From NCBI GenBank assembly GCA_002269645.1, contig NIVC01001166.1, positions 1 to 64,000 on the forward strand: a stretch of DNA of 64,000 bases, written 5' to 3'. The DNA is from Macrostomum lignano. Lineage: Eukaryota. Under the pieces are notes generated by a model, which saw only the letters and a program-made list of their open reading frames with translations, did not search any database and was not told the origin of the DNA. A program made the translations under genes and the position numbers. Shown piece by piece: positions 1 to 26,159 of this stretch (its first letter is position 1; every line of letters begins with the position of its first letter).

Positions 1-1
1 C

Positions 2-133
2 TTTGAACTGGCCGCCTATCTGGGTCTAGGCGGGGGCCTGGCTGCCGCGCTGCTGTACGTTGGCCTCGGCTCGCTCAGTAGGACTCTGTTAGGAGATACC
101 GGCGGCTCAGCTGACCAGAGCCGTCAGTTATAG
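2..133 (+). CDS. 3' end of an upstream gene running off the window; hydrophobic C-terminus, possibly a membrane protein
   Basis: Frame from base 2 reads FELAAYLGLGGGLAAALLYVGLGSLSRTLLGDTGGSADQSRQL* (TAG 131-133). GC-rich coding-like composition drops to AT-rich after the stop; AATAAA near 280. Confidence 0.5.
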   Translation, partial: FELAAYLGLGGGLAAALLYVGLGSLSRTLLGDTGGSADQSRQL

Positions 134-429
134 AGAACATTTTGCCTGTACCCTTCCTTATGGAACAGATGCATTAATTTCTTTCATTATTTAAGCATTT
201 GTAAAAAGCTTACAAGTCTAACACTTTAAGATTCTTAATTGGCCCTCACAGTGACTTGGCTAAAAACGCAAAAACTACAATAAAGGCCGCTACTTATGTT
301 TCATTTGTTGATTGTTTATTTTGCTAGAGATTACCGTTTTATGCGTCTAGCTTATATTTGCTATTTATATTACTAATAAGTAGAGAGAGACTTACTAAAT
401 CTACTTATAAAGCTATATAAGTGTTAGTT

Positions 430-464
430 AGCCAATCAGAAGAATCGGTGAATTAGTGACGTCA
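430..464 (+). promoter_or_regulatory. CCAAT box (AGCCAATCAG 430-439) and CRE (TGACGTCA 457-464) upstream of RBM28
   Basis: Exact consensus matches seen in sequence; function not shown. Confidence 0.4.
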
Positions 465-506
465 TGTCAAAGGTCATAATGAACTCATTTTCGCCTCGTT
501 TTCCAG

Positions 507-2153
507 GAGGTTGACGGAGACATCGAAGAGGGGGCCAATCGGCCTTTAAATAAGAAAAGCGGCTGCAGCAAAAATCTTTAAAAAAGAAGCAGAAACAGCA
601 GAAACAACCGACGAAGTGTCGCCCGAGCAGTTGAAGAAACACCGGAAGCGGAAGCGCCAGCAGGAGCAGCAGGAAGAAGCCCCTGAGAGCGAGAACGAAG
701 AGACAGCGCAGGATGAAGAGCCGCAGCAGCAGAAGAAGCAGAAACTGTCAGAGCAGAAGCCGCGCGATTGCTGACAGATGCCGACGAAGGTCGAACAATA
801 TTTGCTCGCAACGTGAACTTCAGCACAGCGGGAGGCTTTGCGAGAATTTTTCGAATCGAACGTTGGCCGCAGTTGAAGAGTGCCGAATAGTGGCGCGACC
901 GACTTACTGAGCATTCGCGCGTCAGGCCTTCGTAAAATTTTGCAGCAAATCGGACGCCGACTCCTGCCTGTTGAGATGGGCAGCCGATCCTGAGCGCAGC
1001 TTCCGGCTTGACGGCAGTGCCTTGCGCGCTGTGCCTGGCCGTGACCCGGGACCGACTGGCCAAGATTGACAAGACGCCCGCCACCGCGACCGCCGCCGCC
1101 GCTGCGCCGCCGCCAATGAAATGAGAAAGCGGACCAATGCTGCAAACGGAATTTGCATTTGGCTAGGTAAGTTTCTTGGGCTTTATTTATTGCTTGATAA
1201 TTATTCAGCGGCTTGTTCTTTGAAGTCTAGTTTGGGTTGGAGACGGCTTGTTCTTTGATGTCTAGTTTGAGCTGGAGGCGGCTTGTTCTTTGATGTCTAG
1301 TTTGGGGGGCGGAGGCGGCTTGTTCTTTGATGTCTAGTTTGGGCTGGAGGCGGCTTGTTCTTTGAAGTCCAGCTCGTAAAAGTATGAATTGAATGATGTC
1401 AAAAATCCCTAATATCCTTTAAAAAATTCTCCGCAGAGCCGGTCAGCTCCGTCGCGGCAGCAGCGAAGCCGAAGGCGTCCCGGAGTCCGAGCTGGTCCTG
1501 CGCGAGCAGCTGGAGAAGCGCGCCAGGGAAGCGCTGCGCAATCCGGATGTGATGATCAGCCCGACCCGGCTGTGTGTGCACGGCCTGCCGCGCGACCTCG
1601 CCGACCGCGACCTCCGTCGGGCATTTCAGCGCCTAGGCGGTCCCGGCTGCCGCATTGTCGAGTGCCGCATCATGCGCGACACGACCCGACTGGACGGCGG
1701 CGACGCTCAGCTGGCGCCTGGCGCCAAAGTCGCCGGCCGTAGCCGCGGCTTCGGATTCGTGGCCTACGGCGATCACGAGCACGCGCGCGAGCCGTGGAAG
1801 CGGCCAGGCTCGGCCCGTCGCTGCCCAACGGCCGCCGGCTGGTCGTGCAGTTCTCTTTGGAGCGCCAATCGGCGCTGCGGAAGAAGCTCGTACGAACGTC
1901 GGCATCCGGTTCGACTCCCTCTGCTGCCGCCGTAGCCTCCCTGACTCGAATCCCTAAGCCTGACGGTGTTCAGGGTGGCATACCGAAGGCGCCGAAGCGG
2001 CGCGCTCGAGACGGCGCCGCTGGAGTTGGCGCCAAGCAGCAACACCAGCGCCAACGATTAGAGGCGCGACGGCAGCAGGCCGGTCGTCTGTCACGAAAAG
2101 AGTTCCGCCGGAAGCGGAAGGAGGCGCTCATTAGAGAGGGACGATTAAAGTAG
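507..2153 (+). CDS. RBM28: RBM28/Nop4-like RRM protein, exons ~507-1166 and 1437-2153, carrying many single-base indels (assembly error or decaying copy)
   Basis: Pieces across frames match recalled RBM28 RRM3 (DADEGRTIFARNVNFS...EECRIVARP..EHSR.QAFVKF...LDG), NLHLAR, and RRM4 (NPDVMISPTRLCVHGLP...ECRIMRD...GRSRGFGFVAYGDHEHA...RRLVVQFSLE). Intron GTAAGT 1167 to CCGCAG 1436. At least six frame changes in exon 1. Confidence 0.85.
1205..1372. repeat. ~35-bp tandem repeat x5 in the RBM28 intron
   Basis: GGCGGCTTGTTCTTTGATGTCTAGTTTGGGCTGGA recurs near 1210, 1245, 1280, 1317 and 1352. Confidence 0.9.
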
Positions 2154-2244
2154 AAGCTTTAAAGATTGACGCTTGCACTCTGGACTGGCGGCCCATTTTC
2201 AGGCAATTTCAATTCACTATTAACCAATCAACCGCCCCAACCAG

Positions 2245-3650
2245 CTTTAGTGTACACTAGTGCCCAGCAAAGCCTTCCCCCAACTCCTTCCCCCAATGTA
2301 CACCAGACCAGTGCCCAGCAAAGCCTTCCCCAACTCCTCCCCCAGTGTACACCAGTGCCCAGCAAAGCCCTCCTCCAACTCCCCCCCCCCAGTGTACACC
2401 AGTGCCCAGCAAAGCCCTCCTCCAAATCCTCCCCCAGTGTACACCAGTGCCCAGCAAAGCCCTCCCCAACTCCTTCCCCCAATGTACACCAGACCAGTGC
2501 CCAGCAAAGCCCTCCCCCAACTCCTCCCCCCCCAGTGTACACCAGTGCCCAGCAAAGCCCTCCTCCAACTCCCCCCCCAGTGTACACCAGTGCCCAGCAA
2601 AGCCCTCCCCCAACTCCTTCCCCTCAGTGTACACCAGTGCCCAGCAAAGCTTCCCCCAACTCCTTCCCCTCAGTGTACACCAGTGCCCAGCAAAGCCCTC
2701 CCCCAACTCCTTCCCTCAGTGTACACCAGTGCCCAGCAAAGCCCTCCCCCAACTCCTTCCCCTCAGTGTACACCAGTGCCCAGCAAAGCTTCCCCCAACT
2801 CCTTCCCCTCAGTGTACACCAGTGCCCAGCAAAGCCCTCCCCCAACTCCTTCCCCTCAGTGTACACCAGTGCCCAGCAAAGCCCTCCCCCAACTCCTTCC
2901 CCTCAGTGTACACCAGTGCCCAGCAAAGCCCTCCTCCAACTCCCCCCCCAGTGTACACCAGTGCCCAGCAAAGCCCTCCCCCAACTCCTTCCCCTCAGTG
3001 TACACCAGTGCCCAGCAAAGCCCTCCCCCAACTCCTTCCCCTCAGTGTACACCAGTGCCCAGCAAAGCCCTCCCCAACTCCTTCCCCTCAGTGTACACCA
3101 GTGCCCAGCAAAGCCCTCCCCAACTCCTTCCCCTCAGTGTACACCAGTGCCCAGCAAAGCTTCCCCCAACTCCTTCCCACAGTGTACACCAGTGCCCAGC
3201 AAAGCCCTCCCCCAACTCCTTCCCCTCAGTGTACACCAGTGCCCAGCAAAGCCCTCCTCCAACTCCCCCCCCCAGTGTACACCAGTGCCCAGCAAAGCCC
3301 TCCTCCAACTCCCCCCCCAGTGTACACCAGTGCCCAGCAAAGCCCTCCCCAACTCCTTCCCCTCAGTGTACACCAGTGCCCAGCAAAGCTTCCCCCAACT
3401 CCTTCCCCTCAGTGTACACCAGTGCCCAGCAAAGCCCTCCCCCAACTCCTTCCCCTCAGTGTACACCAGTGCCCAGCAAAGCTTCCCCCAACTCCTTCCC
3501 CTCAGTGTACACCAGTGCCCAGCAAAGCTTCCCCCAACTCCTTCCCCTCAGTGTACACCAGTGCCCAGCAAAGCTTCCCCCAACTCCTTCCCCTCAGTGT
3601 ACACCAGTGCCAGCAAAGCTTCCCCACCTTCCCCTCAGTGTACACTAGTG
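2245..3650. repeat. ~46-47-bp C-rich minisatellite, ~30 copies
   Basis: Unit CAGTGTACACCAGTGCCCAGCAAAGCCCTCCCCCAACTCCTTCCCCT; the ORFs over it are open in several frames. Confidence 0.95.
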
Positions 3651-3862
3651 ACCACTCAGCCAAGCCTCTAATTAACTGGGCTTGCATTAATTAACACAAA
3701 AGGCATTTTGTGACGCTTCAAATACTTTACGCTCGTATCACTGCGCGGTTTATTAGTCTATATAATAATAAATGCTGATAAAAGGCTGAGTTGTGACAAA
3801 GTGCAACTGGAATTTTACTTCTCTTTGTTTTCTATATAAATAGTAGCCACTAAGCTTAAGAA

Positions 3863-3880: not shown

Positions 3881-3900
3881 ATAGCATTCCAAAAATATTC

Positions 3901-4212
3901 ATGCTGGCGCCACGCGGCAGAAAATCATCCTTATCGCCGGCGCAAAATCCCTGCGCGCTAGCCAGCCGGCGCCATCGACAGCGCCAACAGCAGCATCGGC
4001 GCCAATTGGAGACGCGCGCAGCGTCAGTTCGCGCCGAGAACGAACGGCTGCGCGCCAAATTAATGAGCGCTCGACGCGAACTGGAATTCCTGCTGGCCTG
4101 CTGGCGTCGGCAGCGCCGCAACTCGGACGAGCCGGCGCCGCCCGGACTTGTCGAAGCGGTGCGCGAGGTGCGCCAACTAATCAGATCGTGGAAGGCGCAG
4201 AATGATGATTAG
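3901..4212 (+). CDS. Small intronless bZIP protein, C/EBP-gamma/CHOP-like, with a non-canonical basic region
   Basis: CALASRRHRQRQQQHRRQLETRAASVRAENERLRAKLMSARRELEFL shows bZIP spacing (R then L at +10), heptads L-V-L-A-L and ENERL as in C/EBP-gamma and CHOP. Cys stands at the position of the usually invariant Asn. Confidence 0.7.
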   Translation: MLAPRGRKSSLSPAQNPCALASRRHRQRQQQHRRQLETRAASVRAENERLRAKLMSARRELEFLLACWRRQRRNSDEPAPPGLVEAVREVRQLIRSWKAQNDD

Positions 4213-4489: not shown

Positions 4490-5952
4490 GGGTCCTCAGA
4501 CTGGCCCTCACCCATCCAGCATCCACTGTGTCCTCAGACTGGCCCTTACCCATCCAGCATCCACTGTGTCCTCAGACTGGCCCTTACCCATCCAGCATCC
4601 ACCGGGTCCTCAGACTGGCCCTCACCTATCCAGCATCCACCGGGTCCTCAGACTGGCCCTCACCCATCCAGCATCCACCGGGTCCTCAGACTGGCCCTCA
4701 CCCATCCAGCATCCACCGGGTCCTCAGACTGGGCCCTCACCCGTCCAGCATCCACTGGGTCCTCAGACTGGCCCTCACCCATCCAGCATCCACTGTGTCC
4801 TCAGACTGGCCCTTACCCATCCAGCATCCACTGTGTCCTCAGACTGGCCCTTACCCATCCAGCATCCACCGGGTCCTCAGACTGGCCCTCACCTATCCAG
4901 CATCCACCGGGTCCTCAGACTGGCCCTCACCCATCCAGCATCCACCGGGTCCTCAGACTGGCCCTCACCCATCCAGCATCCACCGGGTCCTCAGACTGGG
5001 CCCTCACCCGTCCAGCATCCACTGGGTCCTCAGACTGGCCCTCACCCATCCAGCATCCACCGGGTCCTCAGACTGGCCCTCACCCATCCAGCATCCACCG
5101 GGTCCTCAGACTGGCCCTCACCCATCCAGCATCCACCGGGTCCTCAGACTGGGCCCTCACCCGTCCAGCATCCACTGGGTCCTCAGACTGGCCCTCACCC
5201 ATCCAGCATCCACTGTGTCCTCAGACTGGCCCTCACCCATCCAGCATCCACTGTGTCCTCAGACTGGCCCTCACCCATCCAGCATCCACTGTGTCCTCAG
5301 ACTGGCCCTCACCCATCCAGCATCCACCGGGTCCTCAGACTGGCCCTCACCCATCCAGCATCCACCGGGTCCTCAGACTGGCCCTCACCCATCCAGCATC
5401 CACCGGGTCCTCAGACTGGCCCTCACCCATCCAGCATCCACCGGGTCCTCAGACTGGGCCCTCACCCGTCCAGCATCCACCGGGTCCTCAGACTGGCCCT
5501 CACCCATCCAGCATCCACCGGGTCCTCAGACTGGGCCCTCACCCGTCCAGCATCCACTGGGTCCTCAGACTGGCCCTCACCCATCCAGCATCCACCGGGT
5601 CCTCAGACTGGCCCTCACCCATCCAGCATCCACTGCGTCCTCAGACTGGCCCTCACCCATCCAGCATCCACTGTGTCCTCAGACTGGCCCTTACCCATCC
5701 AGCATCCACCGGGTCCTCAGACTGGCCCTCACCCATCCAGCATCCACCGGGTCCTCAGACTGGCCCTTACCCATCCAGCATCCACCGGGTCCTCAGACTG
5801 GCCCTCACCCATCCAGCATCCACCGGGTCCTCAGACTGGGCCCTCACCCGTCCAGCATCCACTGGGTCCTCAGACTGGGCCCTCACCCATCCAGCATCCA
5901 CCGGGTCCTCAGACTGGCCCTCACCCATCCAGCATCCACTGCGTCCTCAGAC
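4490..5952. repeat. 38-bp minisatellite, ~38 copies, ending ~50 bp before the LARP7 ATG
   Basis: Unit GGGTCCTCAGACTGGCCCTCACCCATCCAGCATCCACC. Confidence 0.95.
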
Positions 5953-6001
5953 TTGGCCGCCTGATCATCTTGAATACCTGAATAATCCCGACTAAAATTT
6001 T

Positions 6002-9000
6002 ATGGCTAGCAGCAGTTGCTTAGCCGCATCAGCTGCGGCGGCTTCATCAGACTTGGCCAATAAATTGGATGAGCTCACTGAGCAGCTGAAGCGCCAGTTA
6101 GAATTCTACCTGGGCGAGGGCAATCTTCTCAAAGACAGATTCTTGCGCTCTGAGTTGGACAAGACAGAGGACGGCTATTTGCCACTGAGGCTGTTTCTTC
6201 GGTTCAATCGGGTTATCGAATTCTGCCATCGGGCCGGAGTCAAGCAGCGCGATCAAATTCTTGCGCGTCTGCGCGTTGCTATTGGCGCTTCGCGCTTATT
6301 AGCACTTGACGATGACGGGCTCCGGGTGCGCCGGGCGGCTCCGCTAAGACAGTTGGAGCCGGTCGACGAGAGAACCGTCTATGTGGACGGACTCTGCGGC
6401 AGTGGCGCCAGCGGCGGTAGCGGCTGCAAAGTGGATCGCGATTCTGTTGCCAAGATGTTCTCCACTGTTGGTCAGGTGTGGACTCAGATTCTAAAAATTC
6501 TTACACTGAAGTATCAGAGCTCTAACCCTGAGCATCAGCCTGAAATATCTCAGAGCTGTGTTCCTGAGCATCAGCCTGAAATATCTCAGAGCTGTGTTCC
6601 TGAGCATCACCCTGAAATATCTCAGAGCTGTGTTCCTGAGCATCAGCCTGAAATATCTCAGAGCTGTGTTCCTGAGCATCACCCTGAAATATTTCAGAGC
6701 TGTGTTCCTGAGCATCACCCTGAAATATCTCAGAGCTGTGTTCCTGAGCATCAGCCTGAAATATTTCAGAGCTGTGTTCCTGAGCATCACCCTGAAATAT
6801 CTCAGAGCTGTGTTCCTGAGCATCAGCCTGAAATATCTCAGAGCTGTGTTCCTGAGCATCACCCTGAAATATCTCAGAGCTGTGTTCCTGAGCATCACCC
6901 TGAAATATCTCAGAGCTGTGTTCCTGAGCATCACCCTGAAATATCTCAGAGCTGTGTGCCTGAGCATCACCCTGAAGTATCTCAGAGCTGTGTTCCTGAG
7001 CATCAGCCTGAAATATCTCAGAGCCTAGACATCAGCCTGAAGTATATCAGAGCTGTGTTCCTGAGCATCACCCTGAAGTATCTCAGAGCTGTGTTCCTGA
7101 GCATCACCCTGAAGTATCTCAGAGCTGTGTTCCTGAGCATCACCCTGAAATATCTCAGAGCTGTGTGCCTGAGCATCAGCCTGAAGTATCTCAGAGCTGT
7201 GTTCCTGAGCATCAGCCTGAAGTATCTCAGAGCTGTGTGCCTGAGCATCAGCCTGAAGTATCTCAGAGCTGTGTTCCTGAGCATCACCCTGAAGTATCTC
7301 AGAGCTGTGTGCCTGAGCATCACCCTGAAGTATCTCAGAGCTGTGTTCCTGAGCATCACCCTGAAATATCTCAGAGCTGTGTGCCTGAGGATCAGCCTGA
7401 AGTATCTCAGAGCTGTGTTCCTGAGCATCAGCCTGAAGTATCTCAGAGCTGTGTGCCTGAGCATCAGCCTGAAGTATCTCAGAGCTGTGTTCCTGAGCAT
7501 CAGCCTGAAGTATCTCAGAGCTGTGTGCCTGAAGTATCCTGAAGTGTCTGAACCAAAGCCTTCCACCATCGCTAAATCTCAGTCGCCCCTTCAACCGCAG
7601 GTTCTGTACATCAGCCTGCCTTGCTATCGCACAACCGGGGACTCGAAAGGCTTTGCATTCGTCGAATTTGAAACCTCAGCCGAGGCCCAACTGGCAGTTG
7701 ACCGGCTCAACTCGGTGCCGCGAAGCCAGTGGCGAGCTCGGCTGCCAAAGTTTAGCAGCCAGGTGAGATCGTTGCTGAGGGCCGCCGAGGTGCTCAAGAT
7801 TGACACTACTCAGTTGGAGACTGCACTATACGATCAGGGATGCGGAGGCGATAGCGGCGACTCTGTCGGAACTAGTTCCACATCCGGTTCCGCTTCCGGT
7901 AAACGGCTCGCCGTGATGCCCAAAGCTGAATGGGAACGGCTGCGTCAGGAAATGAAATCAGCTCGAGACAGGGAGATTGCAAAATTGAGAAGCCGAGTTC
8001 AAAAGGTGCGAGTGTTTTTTTGACCTTTATTGTAAAACTGGGTAGGGCAATTAATTGCTTTCCGTTCTGCGTCTGCAGAGCAAAAATAGTTGGAGCTGCC
8101 CGAAATTCTAAGGACCCGATCTCGATTGAATGACCCAGTCTGAGGACCCAGTGGATGCTGAATGGTTGCGGTAGCTCAGTCTGAGGACCCAGTGGATGCT
8201 GAATGGTTGCGGTAGCTCAGTCTGAGGACCCAGTGGATGCTGAATGGTTGCGGTAGCTCAGTCTGAGGACCCTGTGGATGCTGAATGGTTGCGGTAGCTC
8301 AGTCTGAGGACCCTGTGGATGCTGAATGGTTGCGGTAGCTCAGTCTGAGGACCCTGTGGATGCTGAATGGTTGCGGTAGCTCAGTCTGAGGACCCTGTGG
8401 ATGCTGAATGGTTGCGGTAGCTCAGTCTGAGGACCCGGTGGATGCTGAATGGTTGCGGTAGCTCAGTCTGAGGACCCGGTGGACGCTGAATGGTTGCGGT
8501 AGCTCAGTCTGAGGACCCGGTGGATGCTGAATGGTTGCGGTAGCTCAGTCTGAGGACCCGGTGGACGCTGAATGGTTGCGGTAGCTCAGTCTGAGGACCC
8601 GGTGGATGCTGAATGGTTGCGGTAGCTCAGTCTGAGGACCCTGTGGATGCTGAATGGTTGCGGTAGATCAGTCTGAGGACCCGGTGGATGCTGAATGGTT
8701 GCGGTAGATCAGTCTGAGGACCCGGTGGATGCTGAATGGTGGTGGACGTGGTAGCTCAAATTGAGGACCCGGTAGGTGGTGCTCAGGTTATTTTATTTAA
8801 CGATATGTAACGAAAAAACAAACTTTTCCGCCAGGCTAAATCGGCTGAGGCGAATCGGGCCAACGTTGAGGACGCGGCGGGAGGCGCCGCGGGTCCGCCA
8901 GCCCACCTGCGCTTCTCCGCCGGCCTGATTGTCCGGCTGACTGACGCGGACGGCGGCCTGACCCGAAAGCGAATCCGCGATCAGCTGCCGCTCGGCGAAG

Positions 9001-10205: not shown

Positions 10206-10740
10206 GTTTTGTCCACCTTGCGTTCACTTGTACTTGTGTACAACAAGTTAAATGGTTGTTGTTTATTCATAACCCTAGATGCTCCTGAGGCCGCAACCCC
10301 TGAAGAGGAAAGACAAGTTTAGGTGCTAAATTAAATTTAACTGACACTGCGCATACAAACTACTGAAAAAGAGTAGACGTTTTTTAACGACTAAATGCGA
10401 GGGAAATATCTCGTTGCTCTAGCATCTGTGCTACTAATATATATGGTGTTTAATGTACGAGTACGAGATAAAGTCAGCAATGGCATTTTTATGCGCATAC
10501 GAGTATATCGCAGTATCTATGTAGCAGCTAGTTGCTTTCTATACTATTTTTATTTGACTATTATTGCGATTATAGTGAATCTGTGTACAAAATATAATTT
10601 AATATTGCTATCAATATTGTAAAATACGTATTTCTCATTTCATGATTTTTATTGCTCTAAGGCAGGCTTTTCTTTAGAATTACTGAGATGCATTAGTATT
10701 TTTAGTTAGCTAATAAAGCTAACAAAAATCAATATGCTTC

Positions 10741-13925: not shown

Positions 13926-14069
13926 ATATGTAGTTCCAAAATCATCCAATCGTTTCAAAAATTTTTTTAACAATAATAAAAACTGACTTTAGGCTTAACA
14001 TTTTTTTATTGTTCTTTGTTTTACTGTTTCAACTTGTTCCCTACTCTTGATAACAACATTCCCCATTGC

Positions 14070-17000: not shown

Positions 17001-19904
17001 TGTAAATTTTGTTTCAGAGCGACGCGAATGGCCCAAAGATCGCGGAGCCTATTGTCATTTCGTAATGCATTTGCACGGCAAAGGCACTCTAAATGCTATT
17101 GACAACATTGCCAGAGGAATGAGGTCAGTTTTCAATCACTTGGCGTGTTATTTTAATACTCCGATACGCATAGCTTACAAATTCCATTTTCACAGGATGA
17201 AGCCGTCTCATTTCGCCTATTGCGGCACTAAAGACAAGCGAGCGGTCACCAGCCAATGGGTCTCCGTGCACAAGTGAGAATCATTTTCTATTGTGATTAC
17301 TTATAGTAGCTTGTTCAGTAATGATACTTTAATGAAAAATTATTGCATTAATCCAGAGTCGAAGCAGCTCGAATCAAGTCAGTTGCTAACCGGATATCCG
17401 GCGTATCTGTTGGAAACTTTTGGTGAGTTGCTTAGTTAAAAAAATCGTCAAAGTTCCTCATGGATTTTAAAATGGTGCAACCTGCCTCTTTCGCTTATTT
17501 TCCATATCTATATATTGACTGACTTCAGAGATTACTTAAGAGAGAGAAAAGCTGAGCTCTGTTGATGAGGGGCTGTTGTCGTGTAGATGAGTGATGGATC
17601 TTTTTTAACACTTAGCGCCCCAGTCCAGCTTCCAGGCCACAGCTTTTAGGTTTCACACGAGTTCCACACGCAATGGGCCATCCATTTTTTCCTGGGAGGG
17701 AGTGGGGTTGGCTCGCATTTCTTGGCTCTGCTTTTCTTGGAAAGGGGAGGTGACGAAAAACTGCTGCGTTTCTTCATACTCTGTCTTCTGTTTGTGTTTT
17801 TTGTTTGTTTTTTTTAAGCTCGCATTCTGCCATATTCTCACGTTGACCTTAAATCTCTTGGTTTTCAGCTATAAGCAGAATCCGCTCAGGCTTGGAGATC
17901 ACTTGGGAAACGAGTTTTCCTTGATTATTCGGTAAGAACATTTTTTACTAGAAAATAACTTCGTAAATACCATTCCAGATCGCCTAATTGCGATGATAAT
18001 GAAATTAGCACTGGATATTAACAGCCCTCCGAACCCTAATATGCACTCATTCCTACCCATACTCACTGCCTCTCCAAACACCAATGTACACACGCCTCCC
18101 AAACCCTTACCCCCACTCACTGCCTCTCCAAACACCAATGTAAACAGGCCTCTCAAACCCCTACCCCCACTCACTGCCTCTCCAAACACCAATGTACACA
18201 CGCCTCCCAAACCCCTACCCCCACTCACTGCCTCTCCAAACCCCAATGTACACACGCTTCCCGAAGCCCTACTCCCCACTCACTGCCTCTCCAAACCCCA
18301 ATTTACACACGCTTCCCGAAGCCCTACCCCCACTCACTGGCCCTCCAAACCCCAATGTACACACGCTTCCCGAAGCCCTACCCCCACTCACTGGCCCTCC
18401 AAACCCCAATGTACACACGCTTCCCGAAGCCCTACCCCCACTCACTGGCCCTCCAAACCCCAATGTACACACGCTTCCCGAAGCCCTACCCCCACTCACT
18501 GGCCCTCCAAACCCCAATGTACACACGCTTCCCGAAGCCCTACTCCCCACTCACTGCCTCTCCAAACCCCAATGTACACACGCTAATCCAAAAAGCAGTC
18601 CTAAGCCTGCAAATTAAAATCTATCTACTATTATAATTATCAACCACCCCAATCAGAGACGTCCAAGCCAGCTCCGAGGACATCGCTAGCAGCGTAGCCT
18701 CGCTAAAATCCGCCGGCTTCGTGAATTACTTTGGTTTGCAACGCTTCGGCCAGTCCGGCAACGGCGGCACGTTTGAAGTCGGCCGCGCCCTGCTCCGCTG
18801 CCAGTGGTCTCTGGCCATCGATCGAATACTGGAGCCGTGCGGCGCGGACAATCCGACGGCTCGGCGCTGGAAGCTGGCCTATAAAAAGGACGGCGATGCG
18901 GCCACGTGCGCGGCAAAAATGCGCACCGGCCTTGAGCGCAGCCTCCTGCTGGGCATCGCTCGCAACGGCGGACAAGCGAACCTGTCCGCTCTGCAGGCTC
19001 TGCCTAGGAATATGCTGCAGCTGTTCGGCCACAGCTATCAGAGTCTGCTGTGGAATCGGCTGGCAACTGCTCGGTTGAAGCTGTACGGCCCCAAGCCGGC
19101 TCTGGGCGACCTCGTGCAGCTGCCCGACGGCTCCATCAGGGAGATTGGCGGCGACCAGCCCGGCTGTCCGGCCGACCCGGACAGCTGCGAGCTGGCCAGC
19201 GTGGTGCTGCCGCTGCCCGGCTTCGACGTCCGGCTGCCCGGCAACGCCATCGCCGACGCGCTGCGCGACATGCTCGCCGAGGACGGCCTGACCTTGGCTG
19301 ACCTCCGGCACCGGGTCAAGGACCTGTCACTGCCGGGATCCTACAGGTGCGCGCGAATTGGGAAATTTTGGGACATTTCACCATAAAAATCGCCCTCAGA
19401 CATTTGACCATAAGAATCGCCCTCAGTCATTTGACCATAAAAATCTCCTTCAGACATTTGACCATAAAAATCGCCCTTAGAAAGTTGACCATAAAAATCG
19501 CCCTCAGGAATTTGACCATAAAAATCTCCTTCAGGCATTAAACCATAAGAATCGCCCTCAGACAGCTGGCCATAAAAATCGGCCTCAGACAGCTGGCCAT
19601 AAAAATCTCTTATCACATTATTATAAAACCTTTGCTCATCAGGCCGTTGATTGTGAGACCCCAGGGCGTGAGCTACAGTCTCCTGCGCTACACAGATCCC
19701 CGGCTCCCTCTGCTGCTGTCGGACCGGGATCTGCTCAACAAACCCGACCAGCAGCAGCATCAGCTGATAGCTTCATCGTCTGAGGAGACTGGGGATTTGA
19801 AATCGGCAATTCTGCTGCGAATGCGGCTGCCAAAGTCGGCCTACGCCACGATGGCTGTTCGAGAGCTCAGCCGAGGCCAGATTTCTGTGCTGAGCTGTCG
19901 CTAA
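14070..19904 (+). CDS. PUS7: TruD-family pseudouridine synthase PUS7; 10 exons: 14070-14602, 15139-15217, 15301-15396, 16095-16230, 17018-17123, 17196-17273, 17357-17422, 17869-17931, 18657-19346, 19643-19904
   Basis: EADVGIETYLGSHPGFAGALK, DFHVHEV, catalytic YCGTKDKRAVTSQW, LRLGDHLGNEFSLIIR, GFVNYFGLQRFG, HSYQSLLWN, SLPGSYR, LPKSAYATMAVREL. All junctions are GT-AG with consistent phase. Confidence 0.95.
14130..14410 (+). repeat. ~24-bp coding repeat (AEA[K/R]PEV[T/P])n in the PUS7 N-terminus
   Basis: Nine ACCGGAAGT copies plus GCGGAAG variants. Confidence 0.85.
14924..15075 (+). mobile_element. Dispersed ~150-200-bp repeat, copy A (PUS7 intron 1)
   Basis: Aligns by eye with 29081-29252 (GGCAATTCTGCCCTT...CCAATACTGT...GGGTGTACAGCG...TGACTT...CGTCAGGCATGTAC...TGTGCCTTGG.GGTTGGCC) and partly with 59167-59224. 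Confidence 0.65.
15445..16045. repeat. 23-bp minisatellite in PUS7 intron 3, each unit carrying GCTGAGTCAG
   Basis: Unit TAGCTGAGTCAGCAGTTGAATAG, ~25 copies. Confidence 0.95.
16285..16965. repeat. 35-bp minisatellite in PUS7 intron 4
   Basis: Unit AAAAATCGCCCCTGAGCTGTCACCGTCCAAGTCGG. Confidence 0.95.
18050..18585. repeat. 54-bp minisatellite in PUS7 intron 8
   Basis: CCCTACCCCCACTCACTGGCCCTCCAAACCCCAATGTACACACGCTTCCCGAAG units. Confidence 0.9.
19375..19615. repeat. 27-bp minisatellite in PUS7 intron 9
   Basis: ATAAAAATCGCCCTCAGACATTTGACC-like units. Confidence 0.9.
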
Positions 19905-20135: not shown

Positions 20136-21425
20136 GGACTCGAACTCGGGACCTTGTAGTACAGTTGAATGACTGTAGATTATGGGATTCGAACTCTGGA
20201 CCTTGTAGTACAGTTGAATGACTTTAGATTATGGGACTCGAACTCGGGACCTTGTGGTAGAGCCGAGCGACTGTAGATTATGGGATTCGAACTCTGGACC
20301 TTGTAGTACAGTTGAATGACTTTAGATTATGGGACTCGAACTCGGGACATTGTGGTAGAGCCGAGCGACTGTAGATTATGGGATTCGAACTCTGGACCTT
20401 GTAGTACAGTTGAATGACTTTAGATTGTGGGACTCGAACTCGGGACCTTGTGGTAGAGCCGAGCGACTGTAGATTATGGGATTCGAACTCTGGACCTTGT
20501 AGTACAGTTGAATGACTTTAGATTATGGGACTCGAACTCGGGACCTTGTGGTAGAGCCGAGCGACTGTAGATTATGGGATTCGAACTCCGGACCTTGTGG
20601 TACAGCCGAATGACTTTAGATTATGGGACTCGAACCCGGCACCTTGTAGTATAGTCGAATGGCTGTGTAGATTATGGGACTCGAACTCGGGACCTTGTGG
20701 TAGAGCCGAATGACTGTGTTGATTATGGGACTCGAACTTGGGACCTTGTGGTACGGTTGAATGACTGTGTAGATTATGGGACTCGAACTCTAGACCTTGT
20801 GGTAGAACCGAGCGACTGTAGATTATGGGATTCGAACTCCGGACCTTGTGGTACAGCCGAATGACTTTAGATTATGGGACTCGAACCCGGCACCTTGTAG
20901 TATAGTCGAATGGCTGTGTAGATTATGGGACTCGAACTCGGGACCTTGTGGTAGAGCCGAGCGACTGTAGATTATGGGATTCGAACTCTGGACCTTGTAG
21001 TACAGTTGAATGACTTTAGATTATGGGACTCGAACTCGGGACCTTGTGGTAGAGCCGAGCGACTGTAGATTATGGGATTCGAACTCCGGACCTTGTGGTA
21101 CAGCCGAATGACTTTAGATTATGGGACTCAAACCCGGCACCTTGTAGTATAGTCGAATGGCTGTGTAGATTATGGGACTCGAACTCGGGACCTTGTGGTA
21201 GAGCCGAGTGACTGTAGATTATGGGACTCGAACCCGGCACCTTGTAGTATCGTCGAATGGCTTGAACTTTTTTTATGGGGCTCGAACTCGGGACCTTGTG
21301 TTACAATCGAATGACTGTGTAGATTTTCAACTCAAACACAAATGTTAACGGCTCGTTTGGACTCTTGATTCGAACCCGAGAACACCATTCGCTAGACTTT
21401 GGGATTCGAACTCCGGTGTCCGCAG
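20136..21425 (-). repeat. ~49-51-bp tRNA-derived satellite, ~25 copies, each with a Pol III B-box on the minus strand
   Basis: Minus-strand unit GCTCGGCTCTACCACAAGGTCCCGAGTTCGAGTCCCATAATCTACAGTC resembles a tRNA anticodon arm, variable loop (AAGGTC) and T-arm (GTTCGA[A/G]TCC). Confidence 0.8.
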
Positions 21426-21544
21426 GAAACTCACCTTGTAAAGAGCTTAGCGAGTGGGACTTTGATCCCTACTTAATATTTCTGCTCTAATAGATTGCTG
21501 AGATTTTTCTTTGTTCTGTCTGATAATGCATGCCCTAAGCAGCT

Positions 21545-24500
21545 ATGGCCCAAGCGGACACTGAAGAGGATCTGCCAATTCAAGAGGAAGAGGGCGACTC
21601 TGGCGGCGATGCAGAGTCCATGGAGGACGATGAAGCCGATCGGGAGTCTGGAACCAGCGGCGAGGACAGCAGCGACGACGAGCAAGCCGAGGCCGAAGCC
21701 GAAGCCGCTCTGGAAGGCGAGATCGCCTCGCTTCGCCGCAATCTCGAATCGAACCCCTACCACTACGACTCGCACGTCAGGCTGATTGAGCTGCTGCGCA
21801 GAAGCGGCGAACTGGAGGCGACCAGGGCCGCCAGGGAGCGAATGCACAGCTTCTACCCGCTCAGCCCCGGCCTCTGGCTTGACTGGATCGGCGACGAGCG
21901 GAAACTCATTAGCGGTGGCGCCCCGGCTAGTAAAGAGGCCGCCGCCGACATCGACGCGCTGTTCCGTCGGGCGCTTGACGACTATGCCAGCGTTGACGTA
22001 GCCGTCGAGTACTGCGTATTCGCCATCGGCCAGGCCGCCGCTTCCAATGTCGAGGACGCCAGCGGGTCAGCCGCCGCGGCCGAGAGAGTCAGGCGGGTGT
22101 TTGAGCACTGCGTAGCTCTGGTTGGCCGATTCGCCGGCCGGACAGATCAGCGAGTCTGGGAGGCCTGGCGCGAATTTGAATTGCTCGAGCTGGCCAAGTG
22201 CGAGGCCGCCGCGGCTGTGAGCTCGGCGTCGGCCGCGGCCGCTGAAGCCAACGCGGCTGAGCTTGAGAAGCAGCGCAGCCGGGTGCTGGGGCTGTTCAGG
22301 CGCCACCTGGCCATGCCGCACGTTGGCCTGGAGGCCACCTGGCGCGAACTGTGCGATTGGCTGGCCGAGAAGGAGCAGCAGCCGGCTGAGGAGATGCGGC
22401 AGGTGTACGAGAAAAGCCGCGACGAGCTGCGCCGGATTGAACCGTTTGAGAATCTGCTGGCTGACGAGCCGGATAAGTCTGGTGAGCCAGAGATTAGTCT
22501 CTTTGATTGATTCGGTGCCGGATGCTTGTCGGGATTGGTTTCTGTTATTGAAGTCGGAAATTAAACTAATAAATTTGTTTCGAGGAGGAGAAGGTTTAGA
22601 AAACGTGTCGAATCGAACAGAGATGAAGAAGCTTAGAGATTGTTATTATGCGGAAGTCAAAATGATCATAATTGGATGTTATTTCGAAATAGGGCTTTTA
22701 GAAATGGAATCTCTGGGTGAGATTTATTTATCAAGGAAGGAGATCTCAGGGTCAGATTTATGGATATTGGAATCTCAGTTTTTTAGGATTAAATTTTAAG
22801 ATGCAGTTTCGAAAAAAGAAATTTCAGAGTTAGATAGATTATAACTTGGCTAGGGGGTTGTAGCCTAGTGGTTAGAGCGTCCGACTCACGACTTAAAGGT
22901 CGGGGGTTCGATTCTCGACCCACCCGCAATAATTTGTGTGCTTGAGCAAGACACTTAACTCTGCATTGCTTCAGTTCACCCAGCTGAAACATGGGTGCCA
23001 GCATTAGCTGGGGTAATTGAGGCTGTGTGGCGACCCCCAGTCCTTGGACTGAACAGCCGTACGCAGCCTTCAGATGCGCCGCGCAATAGCTGCGGCTGAG
23101 CTGTCGGTTGCACCTCAGCCCATTAGTGCAGATTTAATCAATTATTTTTATTTTTATTATAGATTAAATCAAATTTCTTGGTGACTACTATTTTAAGGAG
23201 TAAGATCTCAGGTGAGATTGTTTGAGGAGCAAAATCTCACGGGCGAGACTTCTTGAGGGGTAGAATCTCAGTTGAGATTGTTTTTGGAGTAAAATCTCAG
23301 GATGGAGTTTTGAATGACTTCAAGATTTTGAACAATAAATGAATTTAATACATTTCCCAGCTCAGCACTACCGGGCCTACATTGAGGCTGCTGTGGGCCC
23401 GACCGCCCAACAGCTGGCCGTGCTGGAGCGCGCCGTCACTGCCCACTGCTTGGACACGGGCCTCTGGGACGCCTACGTGGCCTACGTTTGGCAGCAGTTC
23501 GAGCCCGGGCCGAAGCTGCTCCATCTCTGCCGGAGAGCCGTACGCAATTGTCCGTGGAGCGGCAGCCTGTGGCGTCAGTTGGCGCTGTGCCAGGAGTGCA
23601 CAGGCTGCGACTACGACACCGAGGTCAAGGTCACCTACGAGAGCGCCGTTGCGGCCGGCCTGTCTGACGCTGCCGACCTGCTGGCGATGTGGCTGGCCTA
23701 TCTGGACGCTGCTAGGAGGCGGGCGGCAGCAACTGAGAGCTGGGATGACTGGCACAGGCTGTGCGAAGCCGGCATGGTTGCCGTGGACGCGATGGCGGCC
23801 GATCCGCAGGCCAGCCTGCTGCGCTATGCGGCTCTGGTGCGGGCCCGGCGTGGCCAGCTGGGCGAGGCCAGGCAGCTGTGGGATCAGGTGAGACCCGGGG
23901 AATGCCTTGGTCATTAGGATCATTAGGACTTGATTGGATGAGATTATAAGACACAAATGAAGACTAAAGGACACAATTAGCGATTTTAAGATACAGAGTA
24001 GAATTATAAAGCGCAGATGAGATCATAAGACAATCATATCATGACAATCATAGGACAAAACGCAGATGGGATCATTAAACACAAATTGGGATCATTAAAC
24101 ACAAATTGGGATCATTAAACACAAATTGGGATCATTAAACACAAATTGGGATCATTAAACACAAATTGGGATCATTAAACACAAATTGGGATCATTAGAC
24201 ACCGGGGCATAATCATAAGACATGAATCGAGATCATTAGACACAAATTGGGATCATTAAACACAAATTGGGATCATTAGACACCGGGGCATAATCATAAG
24301 ACATGAATCGAGATCATTAGACACAAATTGGGATCATAAGACACGGATCGGGATTATTAAACACGGATCGGGATCATGAGACTATCGGGATCATAAGACA
24401 CGAATCATGAGACAGGGATCGGGATCATGAGACAGGGATCTGGATCATGATACAGGGATCGGGATCATTAGACACGGATTGGGATCATGAAACACGAATC

Positions 24501-26159
24501 GGGATCATTAGACAATAAGTCCACCAACCCCCCAATCCAGGTGATGAAGCGCGGGCACGGCAACAGCGCCCAGATGTGGCTGCGGCAGCTGGAATTCGAG
24601 CTGAGATTCGGCGATGCCAAGCACATTCGTCGCTGTCTCAGTCGGGCCGTCAACTCGGTGAGCAGCGTGCCGGAATGCGAGTTGCTGCTGCAGCGGCTGG
24701 TTGATTACGAGCGTGAGGAGGGCGACGTATCCAGCTACGTTGAAGCGTTGAAACGGGCGCAGAAGCAGCGCGCCTTGTTGCAACAACGCGCCGCCGAACA
24801 GGGAGGAAGCGGCAGTGGCGGCAAGCGCAAAGCCGGCAGCAAGGGCGGGGCTACTGAGGCGCAGCCGCCGCCTAACAAGCGGGCGAAAGGCTTGGAGACA
24901 GGAAAGAAGCAGCATAGTGAGTGTTAAGAGAATTTCAATGTTTGTATGTGTGTGTGTGTGTGTGTGTGCGTGTGTGTGGATCACCTAATCCCAATCCCAT
25001 CCTTATCACCTGCTCCACTTAATTTCACGTTAAATCTTAAAGCACGAAGTATTTTATTAACAGCTGTAAAAACAAGAATATTAAAAATTAAAAAGATGGA
25101 GAGGAAAAGCTGAATTTAATTACTCCACCAAAGTCACGTTGAGAAGACAATCTCTTCTTCAAATCTGGCATCGTAAAATTCCCAAATCCTATCTTTCTCA
25201 CCAAATCAACAGCAGCGGACGGGGCAGCCGCCAAGACCGACCCGTTCAAGAAGCCGATGCCTCCGCCGCCTCCGGCCGCAGCCTCCAGCAACAATGTCAG
25301 CCATCACGGCGCGAAAGTGGAGCACGACCCGGCCAAGGACTACCGGACAGTGTTTCTCAGCAACCTGGACTACAAAACGGATGAGGCCGGCATTCGGCAG
25401 GCACTGGCGCCGTGCGCCTCGGACATTGTCAGCGTCCGGCTGGTGCGCGACTATCGCGGCCGGTCTAAAGGCTTCGCCTACGTGGAGTTGAAGTCCGGCG
25501 TAGCGGCCGGCGCCGCCCTCCGGCTGGATCGAACGCTGGTGAATGGCCGGCCGATGTTTGTGTCCGAGTCTCGACAGCGCGGCGGCGGCTCCTCGGACAC
25601 CAGCGCCAACGATAGCGCGTTTAAATTCGACACGGGCTTAGAGCGGAACAAGCTGTTCATTCGGAACCTGCCGAAGACTATGGACCAGGCCGGGTTCGAG
25701 CGCCTGTGCTCGGCCCAGCCCGGCTACCGGACCGCCCGCCTGGCCATGTTCCGCAACGGCGCCCCGAAGGGCCACGGCTACGCTGAGTTCGCCGACGAAT
25801 CGTCGGCTAATAAAGCTTTGGCCGCTTTGAACTGCTCTCAGGTTGGGGACAACGAGATTGAGGTTAGCATTAGCAACCCGCCGGCTAGGCAGGGCGGCGG
25901 CGGTCGCGGTGGCGGAGGTCGCGGCGGAGGTCGCGGCGGAGGTCGCGGCGGAGGTCGCGGAGGCGGCGGCGGCGGCGGTCGTCGCGAAGACCACACGAGC
26001 ACGGATCCGACCAGGCATAGGACGCAGATTTCGCTGGTGCCAAGGCAGCTGAAAACATCGGCGGACACTTCCGGTGTTTCGGCTTCCGGTAGCGAGAGCG
26101 GCAGCGGAGGTGGGCGGATGTCGAATGACGACTTCCGGAATATGCTGATGCGGAAGTAG
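21545..26159 (+). CDS. SART3: SART3/p110/Prp24 U4/U6 snRNP recycling factor; exons 21545-22481, 23361-23887, 24541-24916, 25213-26159
   Basis: Acidic N-terminus, HAT repeats (NPYHYDSHVRLIELLRRSGELE..RAARERMHSFYPLSPGLWLDWIGDE; RAVRNCPWSGSLW), two RRMs (TVFLSNLDY...SKGFAYVEL; NKLFIRNLP...PKGHGYAEF) and C-terminal LSm-interaction motif MSNDDFRNMLMRK*. Phases are consistent. Confidence 0.95.
22853..23140 (+). mobile_element. tRNA-derived CORE-SINE (MIR-like) in SART3 intron 1
   Basis: A-box TAGCCTAGTGG (22861), B-box GGTTCGATTCT (22905), CAC anticodon-like loop, then GTGTGCTTGAGCAAGACACTTAACTCTGCATTGCTTCAGTTCACCCAGCTGAAACATGGG, resembling the recalled MIR CORE (GTGTGACCTTGGGCAAGTCACTTAACCTCTCTGAGCCTCAGTTTCCTCATCTGTAAAATGGG); AT-rich tail. 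Confidence 0.8.
24060..24515. repeat. ~20-bp minisatellite in SART3 intron 2
   Basis: GGGATCATTAAACACAAATT and variants. Confidence 0.9.

What the first reader, a model, noticed from the sequence alone, without database searches (positions are those of the whole stretch)
1..26159. Operon-like run of seven same-strand genes enriched in RNA-processing factors, including two U6 snRNA chaperones
Seen: unknown gene, RBM28, bZIP, LARP7, rhodanese, PUS7 and SART3 are all + strand and head-to-tail. AATAAA falls close to the next start (280 vs acceptor 506; 3767 vs ATG 3901; 13975 vs ATG 14070, with a U-rich tract between), and a pyrimidine tract plus CAG lies 2 nt before the SART3 ATG. Established: flatworms use SL trans-splicing and can have polycistronic units; LARP7 and SART3/Prp24 both bind U6, RBM28 associates with nucleoli and snRNPs, and PUS7 modifies U2 and tRNAs. 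Inference: a functionally coherent eukaryotic RNP-biogenesis operon.
Basis: partly seen in the sequence, partly recalled or inferred. Interest (0 to 1): 0.72.

Follow-up and report, generated by a model that had tools for sequence, protein, structure and literature searches.

The report
Spliced-leader operon cluster in Macrostomum lignano
This is a run of eight same-strand flatworm genes, half of them RNA-processing factors, whose messages get a shared spliced leader, an ordinary operon type for this species whose common-function theme is unproven.

Summary
The window is the start of Macrostomum lignano scaffold NIVC01001166.1. On the + strand it carries the tail of a small membrane-protein gene, then an RBM28/Nop4-like gene, a weak bZIP-like ORF, LARP7, a rhodanese, PUS7 and SART3. 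Three other assembly copies show the same order and add a Usp gene in front, making eight genes.

The operon reading is largely supported. At the first codon of RBM28-like, bZIP-like, LARP7 and rhodanese, some copies keep a [T/C]TNCAG acceptor. Other copies have (C)ATG, the 3' end of the spliced leader (SL). This is an imprint left when the assembly was polished with RNA-seq reads. PUS7 carries 8 nt of SL in every copy. The leader's AUG is therefore the start codon.

GenBank locus tags place Usp with RBM28-like, RBM28-like with LARP7, and rhodanese with PUS7 in shared transcriptional units. Repeat-adjusted spacers are 320-898 nt, under the published 1 kb operon cutoff.

Such operons are already described for about 15% of this species' genes. 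A single promoter for all eight genes is not shown. The "coherent RNP-biogenesis" claim rests on four of eight genes, with no synteny outside recent duplicates. Verdict: a large but ordinary member of a known class.

The parts
1..132 (+). 3' end of the CDS of a small membrane-protein gene (81-90 aa in other copies); stop TAG at 130-132. This is gene 2 of the cluster. Gene 1 (Usp) lies off the contig start.
   Evidence: Translation. Full gene and upstream Usp in paralogous loci L002/L003. No Pfam hit.
279..284 (+). AATAAA, candidate poly(A) signal of the small gene, 228 nt before the next trans-splice junction.
499..506 (+). Intact SL trans-splice acceptor TTTTCCAG. The three other copies read TTTTCATG here (SL imprint).
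   Evidence: Positions 504/505 are the only substitutions between the window and L003 outside tandem repeats in 15.1 kb.
507..2153 (+). RBM28/Nop4-like gene (RRM3-RRM4 half, about 460 aa). Exons 507-1166 and 1437-2153. In this window it is disrupted by contig-end indel errors.
   Evidence: Intact 456-459 aa products PAA76172.1, PAA47870.1 and PAA71412.1.
2249..3654 (.). 46-bp tandem repeat array filling most of the RBM28-like to bZIP-like spacer.
3767..3772 (+). AATAAA 137 nt before the bZIP-like junction.
3900..3903 (+). CATG, an SL 3'-end imprint replacing the acceptor. Copy L005 has TATTGCAG and copy L002 has TGCATG.
3904..4212 (+). bZIP-like small ORF (102 aa plus an SL-donated Met).
   Evidence: NCBI CDS 3904-4212. 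Pfam bZIP_2 and bZIP_1 sub-threshold.
4490..5958 (.). 38-bp tandem repeat array filling most of the bZIP-like to LARP7 spacer.
6002..6004 (+). ATG, an SL imprint. Copies L002 and L005 have ATTTTCAG| here.
6005..9533 (+). LARP7 (BOX15_Mlig001906g1). Exons 6005-6475, 7601-8005 and 8835-9533. Both introns carry tandem repeats.
10712..10717 (+). AATAAA 32 nt before the rhodanese junction.
10740..10743 (+). CATG, an SL imprint. Copies L003 and L005 have GCTTTCAG| and copy L002 has TGCATG.
10744..13575 (+). Single-domain rhodanese (BOX15_Mlig025673g1). Exons 10744-10875, 11596-11698 and 13307-13575. Active-site loop is CYCSVGYRS.
13975..13980 (+). AATAAA 98 nt before the PUS7 junction, followed by a T-rich tract.
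14065..14072 (+). ATTGCATG, the last 8 nt of the SL, present in all four copies immediately before PUS7 codon 2.
14073..19904 (+). PUS7 (BOX15_Mlig025673g2), 10 exons, with the GTKDKRA catalytic motif. It shares the transcriptional-unit prefix of the rhodanese gene.
20136..21318 (.). 49-bp tandem repeat filling most of the PUS7 to SART3 spacer.
21523..21547 (+). Start region of SART3: a T-rich tract lies just upstream, then ...GCCCTAAGCAG (CAG at 21540-21542), CT, and ATG (21545-21547). The junction is unresolved; all three copies examined read the same.
21548..26159 (+). SART3 (919 aa annotated; TU cluster Mlig012334). About 4 exons: HAT repeats, two RRMs and a C-terminal LSm-interaction motif.
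27266..27385 (+). First annotated coding exon of the next + strand gene (glutaminase), 1.1 kb after the SART3 stop (517 nt without repeats). No AG acceptor at its annotated start.

Best explanation
The region is a Macrostomum lignano spliced-leader (SL) operon cluster. Eight same-strand genes run in the order Usp, small membrane protein, RBM28/Nop4-like, bZIP-like, LARP7, rhodanese, PUS7, SART3.

They are transcribed as one or a few polycistronic precursors. These are cut into single mRNAs by 3' end formation plus trans-splicing of the 35-nt SL onto [T/C]TNCAG acceptors.

For at least five genes the acceptor sits exactly in front of codon 2. The AUG at the 3' end of the SL therefore serves as the in-frame start codon.

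Shown here:
- gene identities, order and strand;
- SL junctions for RBM28-like, bZIP-like, LARP7, rhodanese and PUS7;
- shared transcriptional-unit names for three sub-groups;
- short repeat-adjusted spacers.

Inferred:
- that all eight genes share one promoter upstream of Usp;
- that SART3 is spliced at codon 2 like the others.

The RNA-processing bias (4 of 8 genes) most likely reflects the general preference of SL-spliced operons for conserved, proliferating-cell genes, not a dedicated RNP-biogenesis unit.
For: 1. Organism and annotation. The window is NIVC01001166.1:1-64000 of assembly Mlig_3_7.

2. SL junctions.
- Among four assembly copies, the 2-6 nt before codon 2 alternate between an intact acceptor and the SL 3' end (..TTATTGCATG). 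RBM28-like reads TTTTCCAG versus TTTTCATG. bZIP-like reads TATTGCAG versus TTCATG or TGCATG. LARP7 reads TTTTCAG versus TTTTATG. Rhodanese reads CTTTCAG versus TTCATG or TGCATG. PUS7 reads ATTGCATG in all copies.
- The assembly was polished with Pilon using RNA-seq as well as DNA reads (PMC5730564). That explains the overwriting.
- Window and L003 are otherwise identical. The only substitutions outside repeats in 15.1 kb are at junction positions 504/505.
- In copies with the intact acceptor there is no genomic start codon nearby, so the SL AUG is needed (sequence).
- The SL 3' ATG is noted as a likely start codon in PMC10468722.

3. Polycistronic units.
- GenBank locus tags carry the transcriptional-unit cluster prefix (method).
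- Usp is Mlig030784g1/g8 and RBM28-like is Mlig030784g3. RBM28-like is Mlig001906g3 and LARP7 is Mlig001906g1/g2/g5. Rhodanese and PUS7 are Mlig025673 g1/g2, g3/g4 and g6/g7 in three copies.
- Older UniProt models fuse RBM28-like, bZIP-like and LARP7.

4. Spacers. Stop-to-junction distances minus tandem repeats are 374, 344, 323, 898, 320 and 460 nt. All are under the 1 kb cutoff of PMC8629364.

5. Boundaries. No annotated gene lies within at least 9 kb upstream of Usp.
Against: - No SL-read, CAGE or long-read data could be inspected directly.
- The published annotation splits the region into at least four transcriptional-unit clusters. The breaks fall at LARP7|rhodanese and PUS7|SART3. This may reflect repeat-induced assembly breaks or real separate promoters.
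- Raw spacers are long (0.4-1.8 kb).
- Promoter-like motifs precede two internal genes: CCAAT plus TGACGTCA at 431-465, and TATATAAATA at about 3835.
- The SART3 junction shows no CAG/ATG alternation. Its annotated CDS starts 5 codons after the ATG in all copies.
- About 60% of SL-spliced genes in this species are not in operons (PMC8629364).
- No canonical A[AT]TAAA follows bZIP-like or PUS7.
Confidence: 0.72

Rival explanations
1. Same-strand cluster of independently transcribed genes. Each gene has its own promoter and outron and is SL trans-spliced as a monocistronic transcript. The shared orientation is incidental or a relic.
For: - Most SL-spliced M. lignano genes are not in operons (PMC8629364).
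- Raw spacers of 0.4-1.8 kb are long enough for promoters.
- A CCAAT box and TGACGTCA lie 45-75 nt upstream of the RBM28-like acceptor.
- TATATAAATA lies about 65 nt upstream of the bZIP-like junction.
- The annotation has separate TU clusters for LARP7, rhodanese/PUS7 and SART3.
Against: - Adjacent non-homologous genes share TU prefixes in several copies.
- Older gene models fuse three of the genes.
- Spacers shrink to 320-898 nt once tandem repeats are removed.
- Eight consecutive same-strand genes have a chance probability of about 1% under random orientation.
Confidence: 0.2
2. One reading: a functionally selected RNP or snRNP-biogenesis operon. LARP7, SART3, PUS7 and RBM28-like are kept together to co-regulate snRNA and RNP maturation.
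For: - Four of the eight genes act on snRNAs or RNPs.
- LARP7-dependent U6 methylation and SART3 U6 recycling are documented (PMC13109388, PMC4381082).
- The cluster is among the largest by the published size range, where the maximum is nine genes.
Against: - The other four genes (Usp, small membrane protein, bZIP-like, rhodanese) have no RNA link.
- The category 'RNA-processing' was chosen after seeing the genes.
- SL-spliced and operon genes are generally enriched for conserved and neoblast genes (PMC8629364).
- Flatworm operons described so far pair unrelated genes and are poorly conserved (PMC12582326).
- Gene order is shown only in 98-99.6% identical duplicates.
- No synteny was seen in an unrelated PUS7 contig.
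Confidence: 0.15
3. Assembly or annotation artefact: the apparent cluster results from mis-assembly or chimeric contigs.
For: - The window starts at a contig end with about 18 indel errors in 2.25 kb.
- The junction bases are demonstrably altered by polishing.
- The scaffold carries a second, inverted copy at 220-254 kb.
Against: - The same gene order and spacers occur in four separately assembled copies on three scaffolds.
- The errors affect single bases, not order.
Confidence: 0.03

Closest known systems
Macrostomum lignano SL operons (Wudarski et al. 2017, PMC5730564; Ustyantsev & Berezikov 2021, PMC8629364)
   Same: - Same species and the same single 35-nt SL.
- [T/C]TNCAG acceptors.
- Same-strand neighbours with repeat-adjusted spacers under 1 kb.
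- Tandem repeats inflating the spacers.
- Multi-gene transcriptional units cut at SL and poly(A) sites.
- Enrichment for conserved genes.
   Different: - With eight genes it sits at the upper end of the reported size range (most operons have 2-3 genes; the maximum is nine).
- This particular cluster and its gene content have not been described in the papers I could search.
- The published annotation represents it as several units, not one.
Caenorhabditis elegans operons (SL2-type)
   Same: - A polycistronic precursor resolved by 3' end formation coupled to SL trans-splicing.
- A poly(A) signal roughly 100 nt upstream of the next acceptor in the rhodanese to PUS7 pair (98 nt) and the RBM28-like to bZIP-like pair (137 nt).
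- A bias toward housekeeping genes (general knowledge).
   Different: - A single SL rather than a specialised SL2.
- Spacers of hundreds of nt to 1.8 kb filled with tandem repeats.
- The SL supplies the initiator AUG, which nematode SLs do not.
Flatworm SL 3'-terminal AUG used as initiator (described for Schistosoma; noted for Macrostomum in PMC10468722)
   Same: The acceptor is placed exactly before codon 2, so the SL AUG is the in-frame start. In copies with the intact acceptor, no genomic ATG is available.
   Different: Here it applies to five consecutive genes of one cluster. It was inferred from assembly copies, not from mRNA or protein data.

Membership tests
SL-resolved operon (M. lignano definition, PMC8629364) | Adjacent genes in the same orientation with no opposite-strand gene between them | tested here: met
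   The NCBI annotation of four copies lists only + strand genes from Usp to SART3. No credible - strand ORF in 1-26159.
SL-resolved operon (M. lignano definition, PMC8629364) | Downstream genes are SL trans-spliced | tested here: met
   Indirect but specific. CAG-acceptor versus SL-3'-end alternation at RBM28-like, bZIP-like, LARP7 and rhodanese, and 8 nt of SL before PUS7, with RNA-seq-based Pilon polishing as the cause. SART3 is inconclusive. SL reads themselves were not available.
SL-resolved operon (M. lignano definition, PMC8629364) | Repeat-adjusted intergenic distance below 1 kb | tested here: met
   Stop-to-junction distances minus TRF repeats are 374, 344, 323, 898, 320 and 460 nt. 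These are upper bounds because 3' UTRs were not subtracted.
SL-resolved operon (strict sense) | One promoter and one polycistronic precursor covering all genes | tested here: inconclusive
   Shared TU-cluster prefixes link Usp with RBM28-like, RBM28-like with LARP7, and rhodanese with PUS7. LARP7|rhodanese and PUS7|SART3 fall in different clusters. No TSS data.
SL-resolved operon (strict sense) | Gene order conserved in related species | not testable with these tools
   Only M. lignano copies (98-99.6% identical) were retrievable. The F. hepatica SART3 gene spans 129 kb with no neighbour in reach.
LARP7 | La motif + RRM1 + C-terminal xRRM, closer to LARP7 than to genuine La | tested here: met
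   Pfam La, RRM_1 and RRM_3/xRRM. Human LARP7 at 4.2e-33 over residues 22-413, versus La at 6e-8.
SART3/Prp24 | N-terminal HAT repeats, two RRMs, C-terminal LSm-interaction motif | tested here: met
   HAT_PRP39_N and Suf, RRM_1 x2, and Lsm_interact (E 4e-4, just under its cutoff). F. hepatica SART3 at 31% identity, 95% coverage and 3e-98.
PUS7/TruD | TruD domain with the catalytic Asp in the GTKD motif | tested here: met
   TruD at 2e-31. Human PUS7 at 1.2e-68, colinear. YCGTKDKRAVT aligns with human YMGTKDKRAIT.
RBM28/Nop4 | Four RRMs (RRM1-4) | tested here: not met
   The intact 459-aa product aligns colinearly to yeast Nop4 residues 245-621 (RRM3, linker, RRM4; 5e-21) and to human RBM28 RRM3 (4.6e-14). 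It starts at the SL junction with no RRM1-2. It is RBM28/Nop4-like, not a full member.
bZIP transcription factor | Basic region plus leucine zipper recognised by Pfam bZIP models | tested here: inconclusive
   bZIP_2 at E 0.0011 (19.4 bits against a 22.3 cutoff) and bZIP_1 at E 0.007. THOC7 coiled-coil scores at a similar level.

The most novel reading that the evidence does not exclude
The cluster is a single eight-gene operon, among the largest in M. lignano. Selection keeps LARP7, SART3, PUS7 and the RBM28/Nop4-like gene co-transcribed, so that snRNA and RNP maturation capacity is tuned as one unit in proliferating neoblasts. The same linkage would then be present in other Macrostomum species.
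Probability: 0.12. Interest if true: 0.55.

Novelty: new member of a known kind. Interest (0 to 1): 0.3.

Why it matters
For the finding itself, the value is modest. It documents one of the larger SL operon clusters of a transgenic flatworm model. It also shows five consecutive genes that depend on the leader's AUG for translation. This makes the cluster a convenient test case for how flatworm polycistrons are resolved, and for whether operon membership co-regulates snRNP-biogenesis factors.

The by-product may matter more in practice. The public Mlig_3_7 assembly has trans-splice acceptors overwritten by SL bases at many sites in this cluster. This creates false genomic start codons and destroys AG acceptors. 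If it is widespread, it would distort acceptor-motif statistics, where the published motif was found at only 9,551 of 21,754 sites. It would also distort gene models, promoter and outron design for transgenes, and any sequence-only reading of this genome.

Tried and rejected
- Looking up the bZIP-like ORF from its ATG as an exact protein found nothing. The annotated product lacks the Met.
- A homology search with a PUS7 exon returned no Macrostomum protein. This briefly suggested a different organism. The LARP7 search fixed the source.
- I first read the RBM28-like frameshifts as a pseudogene. I rejected this after both paralogues agreed against the window at every indel, and the indels proved confined to the first 2.25 kb of the contig.
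- I considered that LARP7 might be genuine La. The PDB comparison rejected this.
- Rfam and tRNA scans of the window were empty, and no SL RNA gene lies in the window.
- Gene IDs were not found in the papers or held supplements.
- My best SART3 exon model (919 aa) was not an exact match to the deposited protein. The window copy's own locus tag is therefore unknown, and the prefix Mlig012334 comes from the paralogue.
- An 8-nt SL match alone is not significant window-wide (2 seen, about 1.5 expected). It counts only because of its position at PUS7 codon 1.
- Synteny outside the species failed or could not be tested.
- The rhodanese showed no specific link to tRNA or RNA modification enzymes.

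Full report
**What is there**

The window is the first 64 kb of Macrostomum lignano scaffold NIVC01001166.1, assembly Mlig_3_7 (GCA_002269645.1). Locus and window coordinates coincide. My three-exon LARP7 model is 100% identical to PAA71379.1, BOX15_Mlig001906g1.

Tandem repeats make up 36.5% of the window. They fill introns and intergenic spacers.

On the + strand of 1-26159 I confirm the following genes:
- The last 132 nt of a small membrane-protein gene.
- An RBM28/Nop4-like gene at 507-2153.
- A 103-codon ORF at 3901-4212 with only sub-threshold bZIP similarity.
- LARP7 at 6002-9533. It has La, RRM and xRRM domains. The PDB match is LARP7 at 4e-33 against La at 6e-8.
- A single-domain rhodanese at 10741-13575.
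- PUS7 at 14070-19904. Human PUS7 matches at 1e-68, and my 10-exon, 701-aa model equals PAA71381.1.
- SART3 at 21545-26159. It has HAT repeats, two RRMs and an LSm-interaction motif, and the Fasciola SART3 matches at 3e-98.

No credible gene lies on the - strand in this interval.

**The cluster is larger than the window shows, and exists four times**

Three other copies are in the assembly:
- NIVC01000838.1 (L002/L008/L009), about 98% identical.
- NIVC01004304.1 (L003/L007), 99.6% identical.
- An inverted copy on the same scaffold at 220-254 kb (L005/L006).

All have the same order and strand. They add a universal-stress-protein (Usp) gene and the complete small gene upstream.

No gene is annotated for at least 9 kb upstream of Usp. 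Downstream, the first annotated coding exon of a glutaminase gene lies on the + strand at 27266, 1.1 kb after SART3. The rest of that gene is at 44.6-48.5 kb.

The unit is therefore eight genes: Usp, small membrane protein, RBM28/Nop4-like, bZIP-like, LARP7, rhodanese, PUS7 and SART3. These copies are recent duplicates, so their agreement excludes mis-assembly but says nothing about selection on order.

**The RBM28-like gene**

In the window this gene carries seven frameshifts. I first took it for a pseudogene. Two observations reject that:
- At every indel, both L002 and L003 agree with each other against the window.
- Against L003, 18 of the 26 indels outside tandem repeats fall in the first 2.25 kb of the contig.

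These are contig-end consensus errors. The intact product is 456-459 aa (PAA76172.1 and others). It aligns colinearly with the RRM3-linker-RRM4 half of yeast Nop4 (5e-21) and with human RBM28 RRM3 (4.6e-14). It has no RRM1-2. It is a half-length relative of RBM28, not a full member.

**Direct sequence evidence for SL trans-splicing**

Comparing the four copies at the first codon of each gene gave an unexpected and decisive pattern.

| Gene | Copies with intact acceptor | Copies with SL 3' end |
|---|---|---|
| RBM28-like | window: TTTTCCAG\|GAG | L002, L003, L005: TTTTCATG\|GAG |
| bZIP-like | L005: TATTGCAG\|CTG | window, L003: TTCATG; L002: TGCATG |
| LARP7 | L002, L005: TTTTCAG\|GCT | window, L003: TTTTATG |
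| Rhodanese | L003, L005: CTTTCAG\|TTT | window: TTCATG; L002: TGCATG |
| PUS7 | none | all four: ATTGCATG\|GCC |

The replacing bases are always the 3' end of the M. lignano spliced leader, CGGTCTCTTACTGCGAAGACTCAATTTATTGCATG (PMC8629364).

The assembly paper states that the Canu assembly was polished with Pilon using Illumina DNA reads and RNA-seq reads mapped by STAR (PMC5730564). SL-bearing reads would overwrite the acceptor with leader bases wherever RNA coverage dominated.

This fits three further facts:
- Window and L003 are otherwise identical. Their only substitutions outside repeats in 15.1 kb are junction positions 504 and 505, and two of the few remaining indels are the rhodanese junction.
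- The unpolished contig end is the one place where the window keeps its true CAG.
- All four intact acceptors fit the published SL acceptor motif [T/C]TNCAG.

In copies with the intact acceptor no genomic ATG is available nearby. The SL 3' AUG must therefore be the initiator, in frame for all five genes. This use is noted for Macrostomum in PMC10468722.

The ATGs at 3901, 6002, 10741 and 14070 in the window are therefore artefacts that mark trans-splice junctions.

SART3 is unresolved. All three copies examined read CAGCTATGGCC. Splicing at the upstream CAG would put the SL AUG out of frame, ahead of a long overlapping ORF. By analogy I think the ATG is again an imprint, but this is inference.

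**Evidence for polycistronic transcription**

In the published annotation, RNA-seq-assembled 'transcriptional units' were clustered and given a shared name prefix. They were then cut into genes at experimentally supported SL and poly(A) sites (PMC5730564). Non-homologous neighbours in this cluster share prefixes:
- Usp is Mlig030784g1/g8, and RBM28-like is Mlig030784g3.
- RBM28-like is Mlig001906g3, and LARP7 is Mlig001906g1/g2/g5.
- Rhodanese and PUS7 are Mlig025673 g1/g2, g3/g4 and g6/g7 in three copies.
- SART3 is Mlig012334.

I predicted the PUS7 tag from the numbering before looking it up. Older UniProt models (A0A1I8H8E2, A0A1I8HDK8) fuse RBM28-like, bZIP-like and LARP7.

Stop-to-junction distances are 374, 1750, 1792, 1210, 497 and 1643 nt raw. 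After removing tandem repeats they are 374, 344, 323, 898, 320 and 460 nt. All are below the 1 kb repeat-adjusted cutoff that Ustyantsev and Berezikov used to call operons. Those authors also note that assembled units tend to break in repeat-rich spacers.

By that definition the eight genes form one operon. Their reported maximum is nine genes.

**What is not shown**

- I could not see SL reads, TSS data or long reads.
- The annotation breaks between LARP7 and rhodanese, and between PUS7 and SART3.
- Promoter-like motifs precede two internal genes: CCAAT plus TGACGTCA at 431-465, and TATATAAATA near 3835.
- AATAAA proximity to junctions is only marginal (p about 0.06), and two spacers have no canonical signal.

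A chain of two to four units, or internal promoters, therefore remains possible.

**Functional coherence**

Four of the eight genes act on snRNAs or RNPs. The cited roles of SART3 and LARP7 on U6 are documented (PMC4381082, PMC2173746, PMC13109388). LARP7 is first of all the 7SK protein (my knowledge).

The other four genes have no RNA link. The category was chosen after the fact. SL-spliced and operonic genes in this species are strongly biased to conserved and neoblast genes. Flatworm operons described elsewhere pair unrelated genes and are poorly conserved. Elsewhere in the same window FRG1 also occurs, which hints at a high local background of such genes.

Synteny beyond the species could not be tested. 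I rate the selected-coherence reading at about 0.15.

**Verdict**

The operon mechanism is well supported for sub-groups and plausible for the whole cluster. The coherence claim is unproven. The class is already described for this species, so this is a new, large member of a known kind.

The most useful by-product is the SL imprint in the reference assembly. I did not find it mentioned in the papers I could search.

Noticed in passing
window 3900-3903, 6002-6004, 10740-10743, 14065-14072; same sites in L002, L003, L005: In the public Mlig_3_7 assembly, trans-splice acceptors are overwritten by 3-8 nt of the spliced-leader 3' end in some copies. This creates false genomic ATGs and destroys the AG. 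The likely cause is Pilon polishing with RNA-seq reads. If it is genome-wide it would bias acceptor-motif counts (the published motif was found at 9,551 of 21,754 sites) and gene models.
   Followed up: partly
window 1-2250: The contig end carries 18 private single-base indels relative to a 99.6% identical copy, against 8 in the next 13 kb. These break the RBM28-like reading frame. This stretch also escaped the SL overwriting, which suggests it went unpolished.
   Followed up: yes
window 27266 and 44624-48492, with 35944-38991 (-) and 40743-41582 (+): The first annotated glutaminase exon is at 27266 and the catalytic and ankyrin exons are at 44.6-48.5 kb. An amiloride-sensitive channel gene (- strand) and FRG1 (+ strand) would then be nested in a 17 kb intron. 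Alternatively the gene model joins unrelated exons.
   Followed up: partly
window 28745-28753 (+): A second 8-nt match to the SL 3' end (ATTGCATG) is followed by TCTTCGCAG and only a 22-codon ORF. It is identical in three copies. It may be chance (about 1.5 expected per window) or the imprint of an unannotated trans-spliced transcript.
   Followed up: partly
window 431-465 and 3833-3845: CCAAT and the palindrome TGACGTCA lie 45-75 nt upstream of the RBM28-like acceptor, and TATATAAATA lies about 65 nt upstream of the bZIP-like junction. These are candidate internal promoter elements.
   Followed up: no
NIVC01001166.1 1-30 kb and 220-254 kb (L005, L006): The same scaffold carries two copies of the whole cluster in inverted orientation. 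There are four copies in the assembly overall, so either a real large inverted duplication or a scaffolding artefact.
   Followed up: partly
UniProt A0A1I8H8E2 (804 aa), A0A1I8I253 (805 aa), A0A1I8HDK8 (1021 aa): Older ML2-based protein models cluster with the RBM28-like and bZIP-like products, and two of them are named as La-type (LARP7-like) proteins. They look like fusions of adjacent cistrons.
   Followed up: no
window 51148-53247 (+): A 700-codon open frame has a weak, sub-threshold RIX1 (ribosome-biogenesis) match at E 0.004. It may be another RNA-related gene in the window.
   Followed up: no
window 9264-9465: The LARP7 C-terminal Ser/Gly-rich region is a 24-bp tandem repeat. The deposited proteins (487-495 aa) have fewer units than the genomic frame (526 codons including the imprint ATG), so the annotation places an 'intron' inside the repeat or the copies differ in unit number.
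   Followed up: partly
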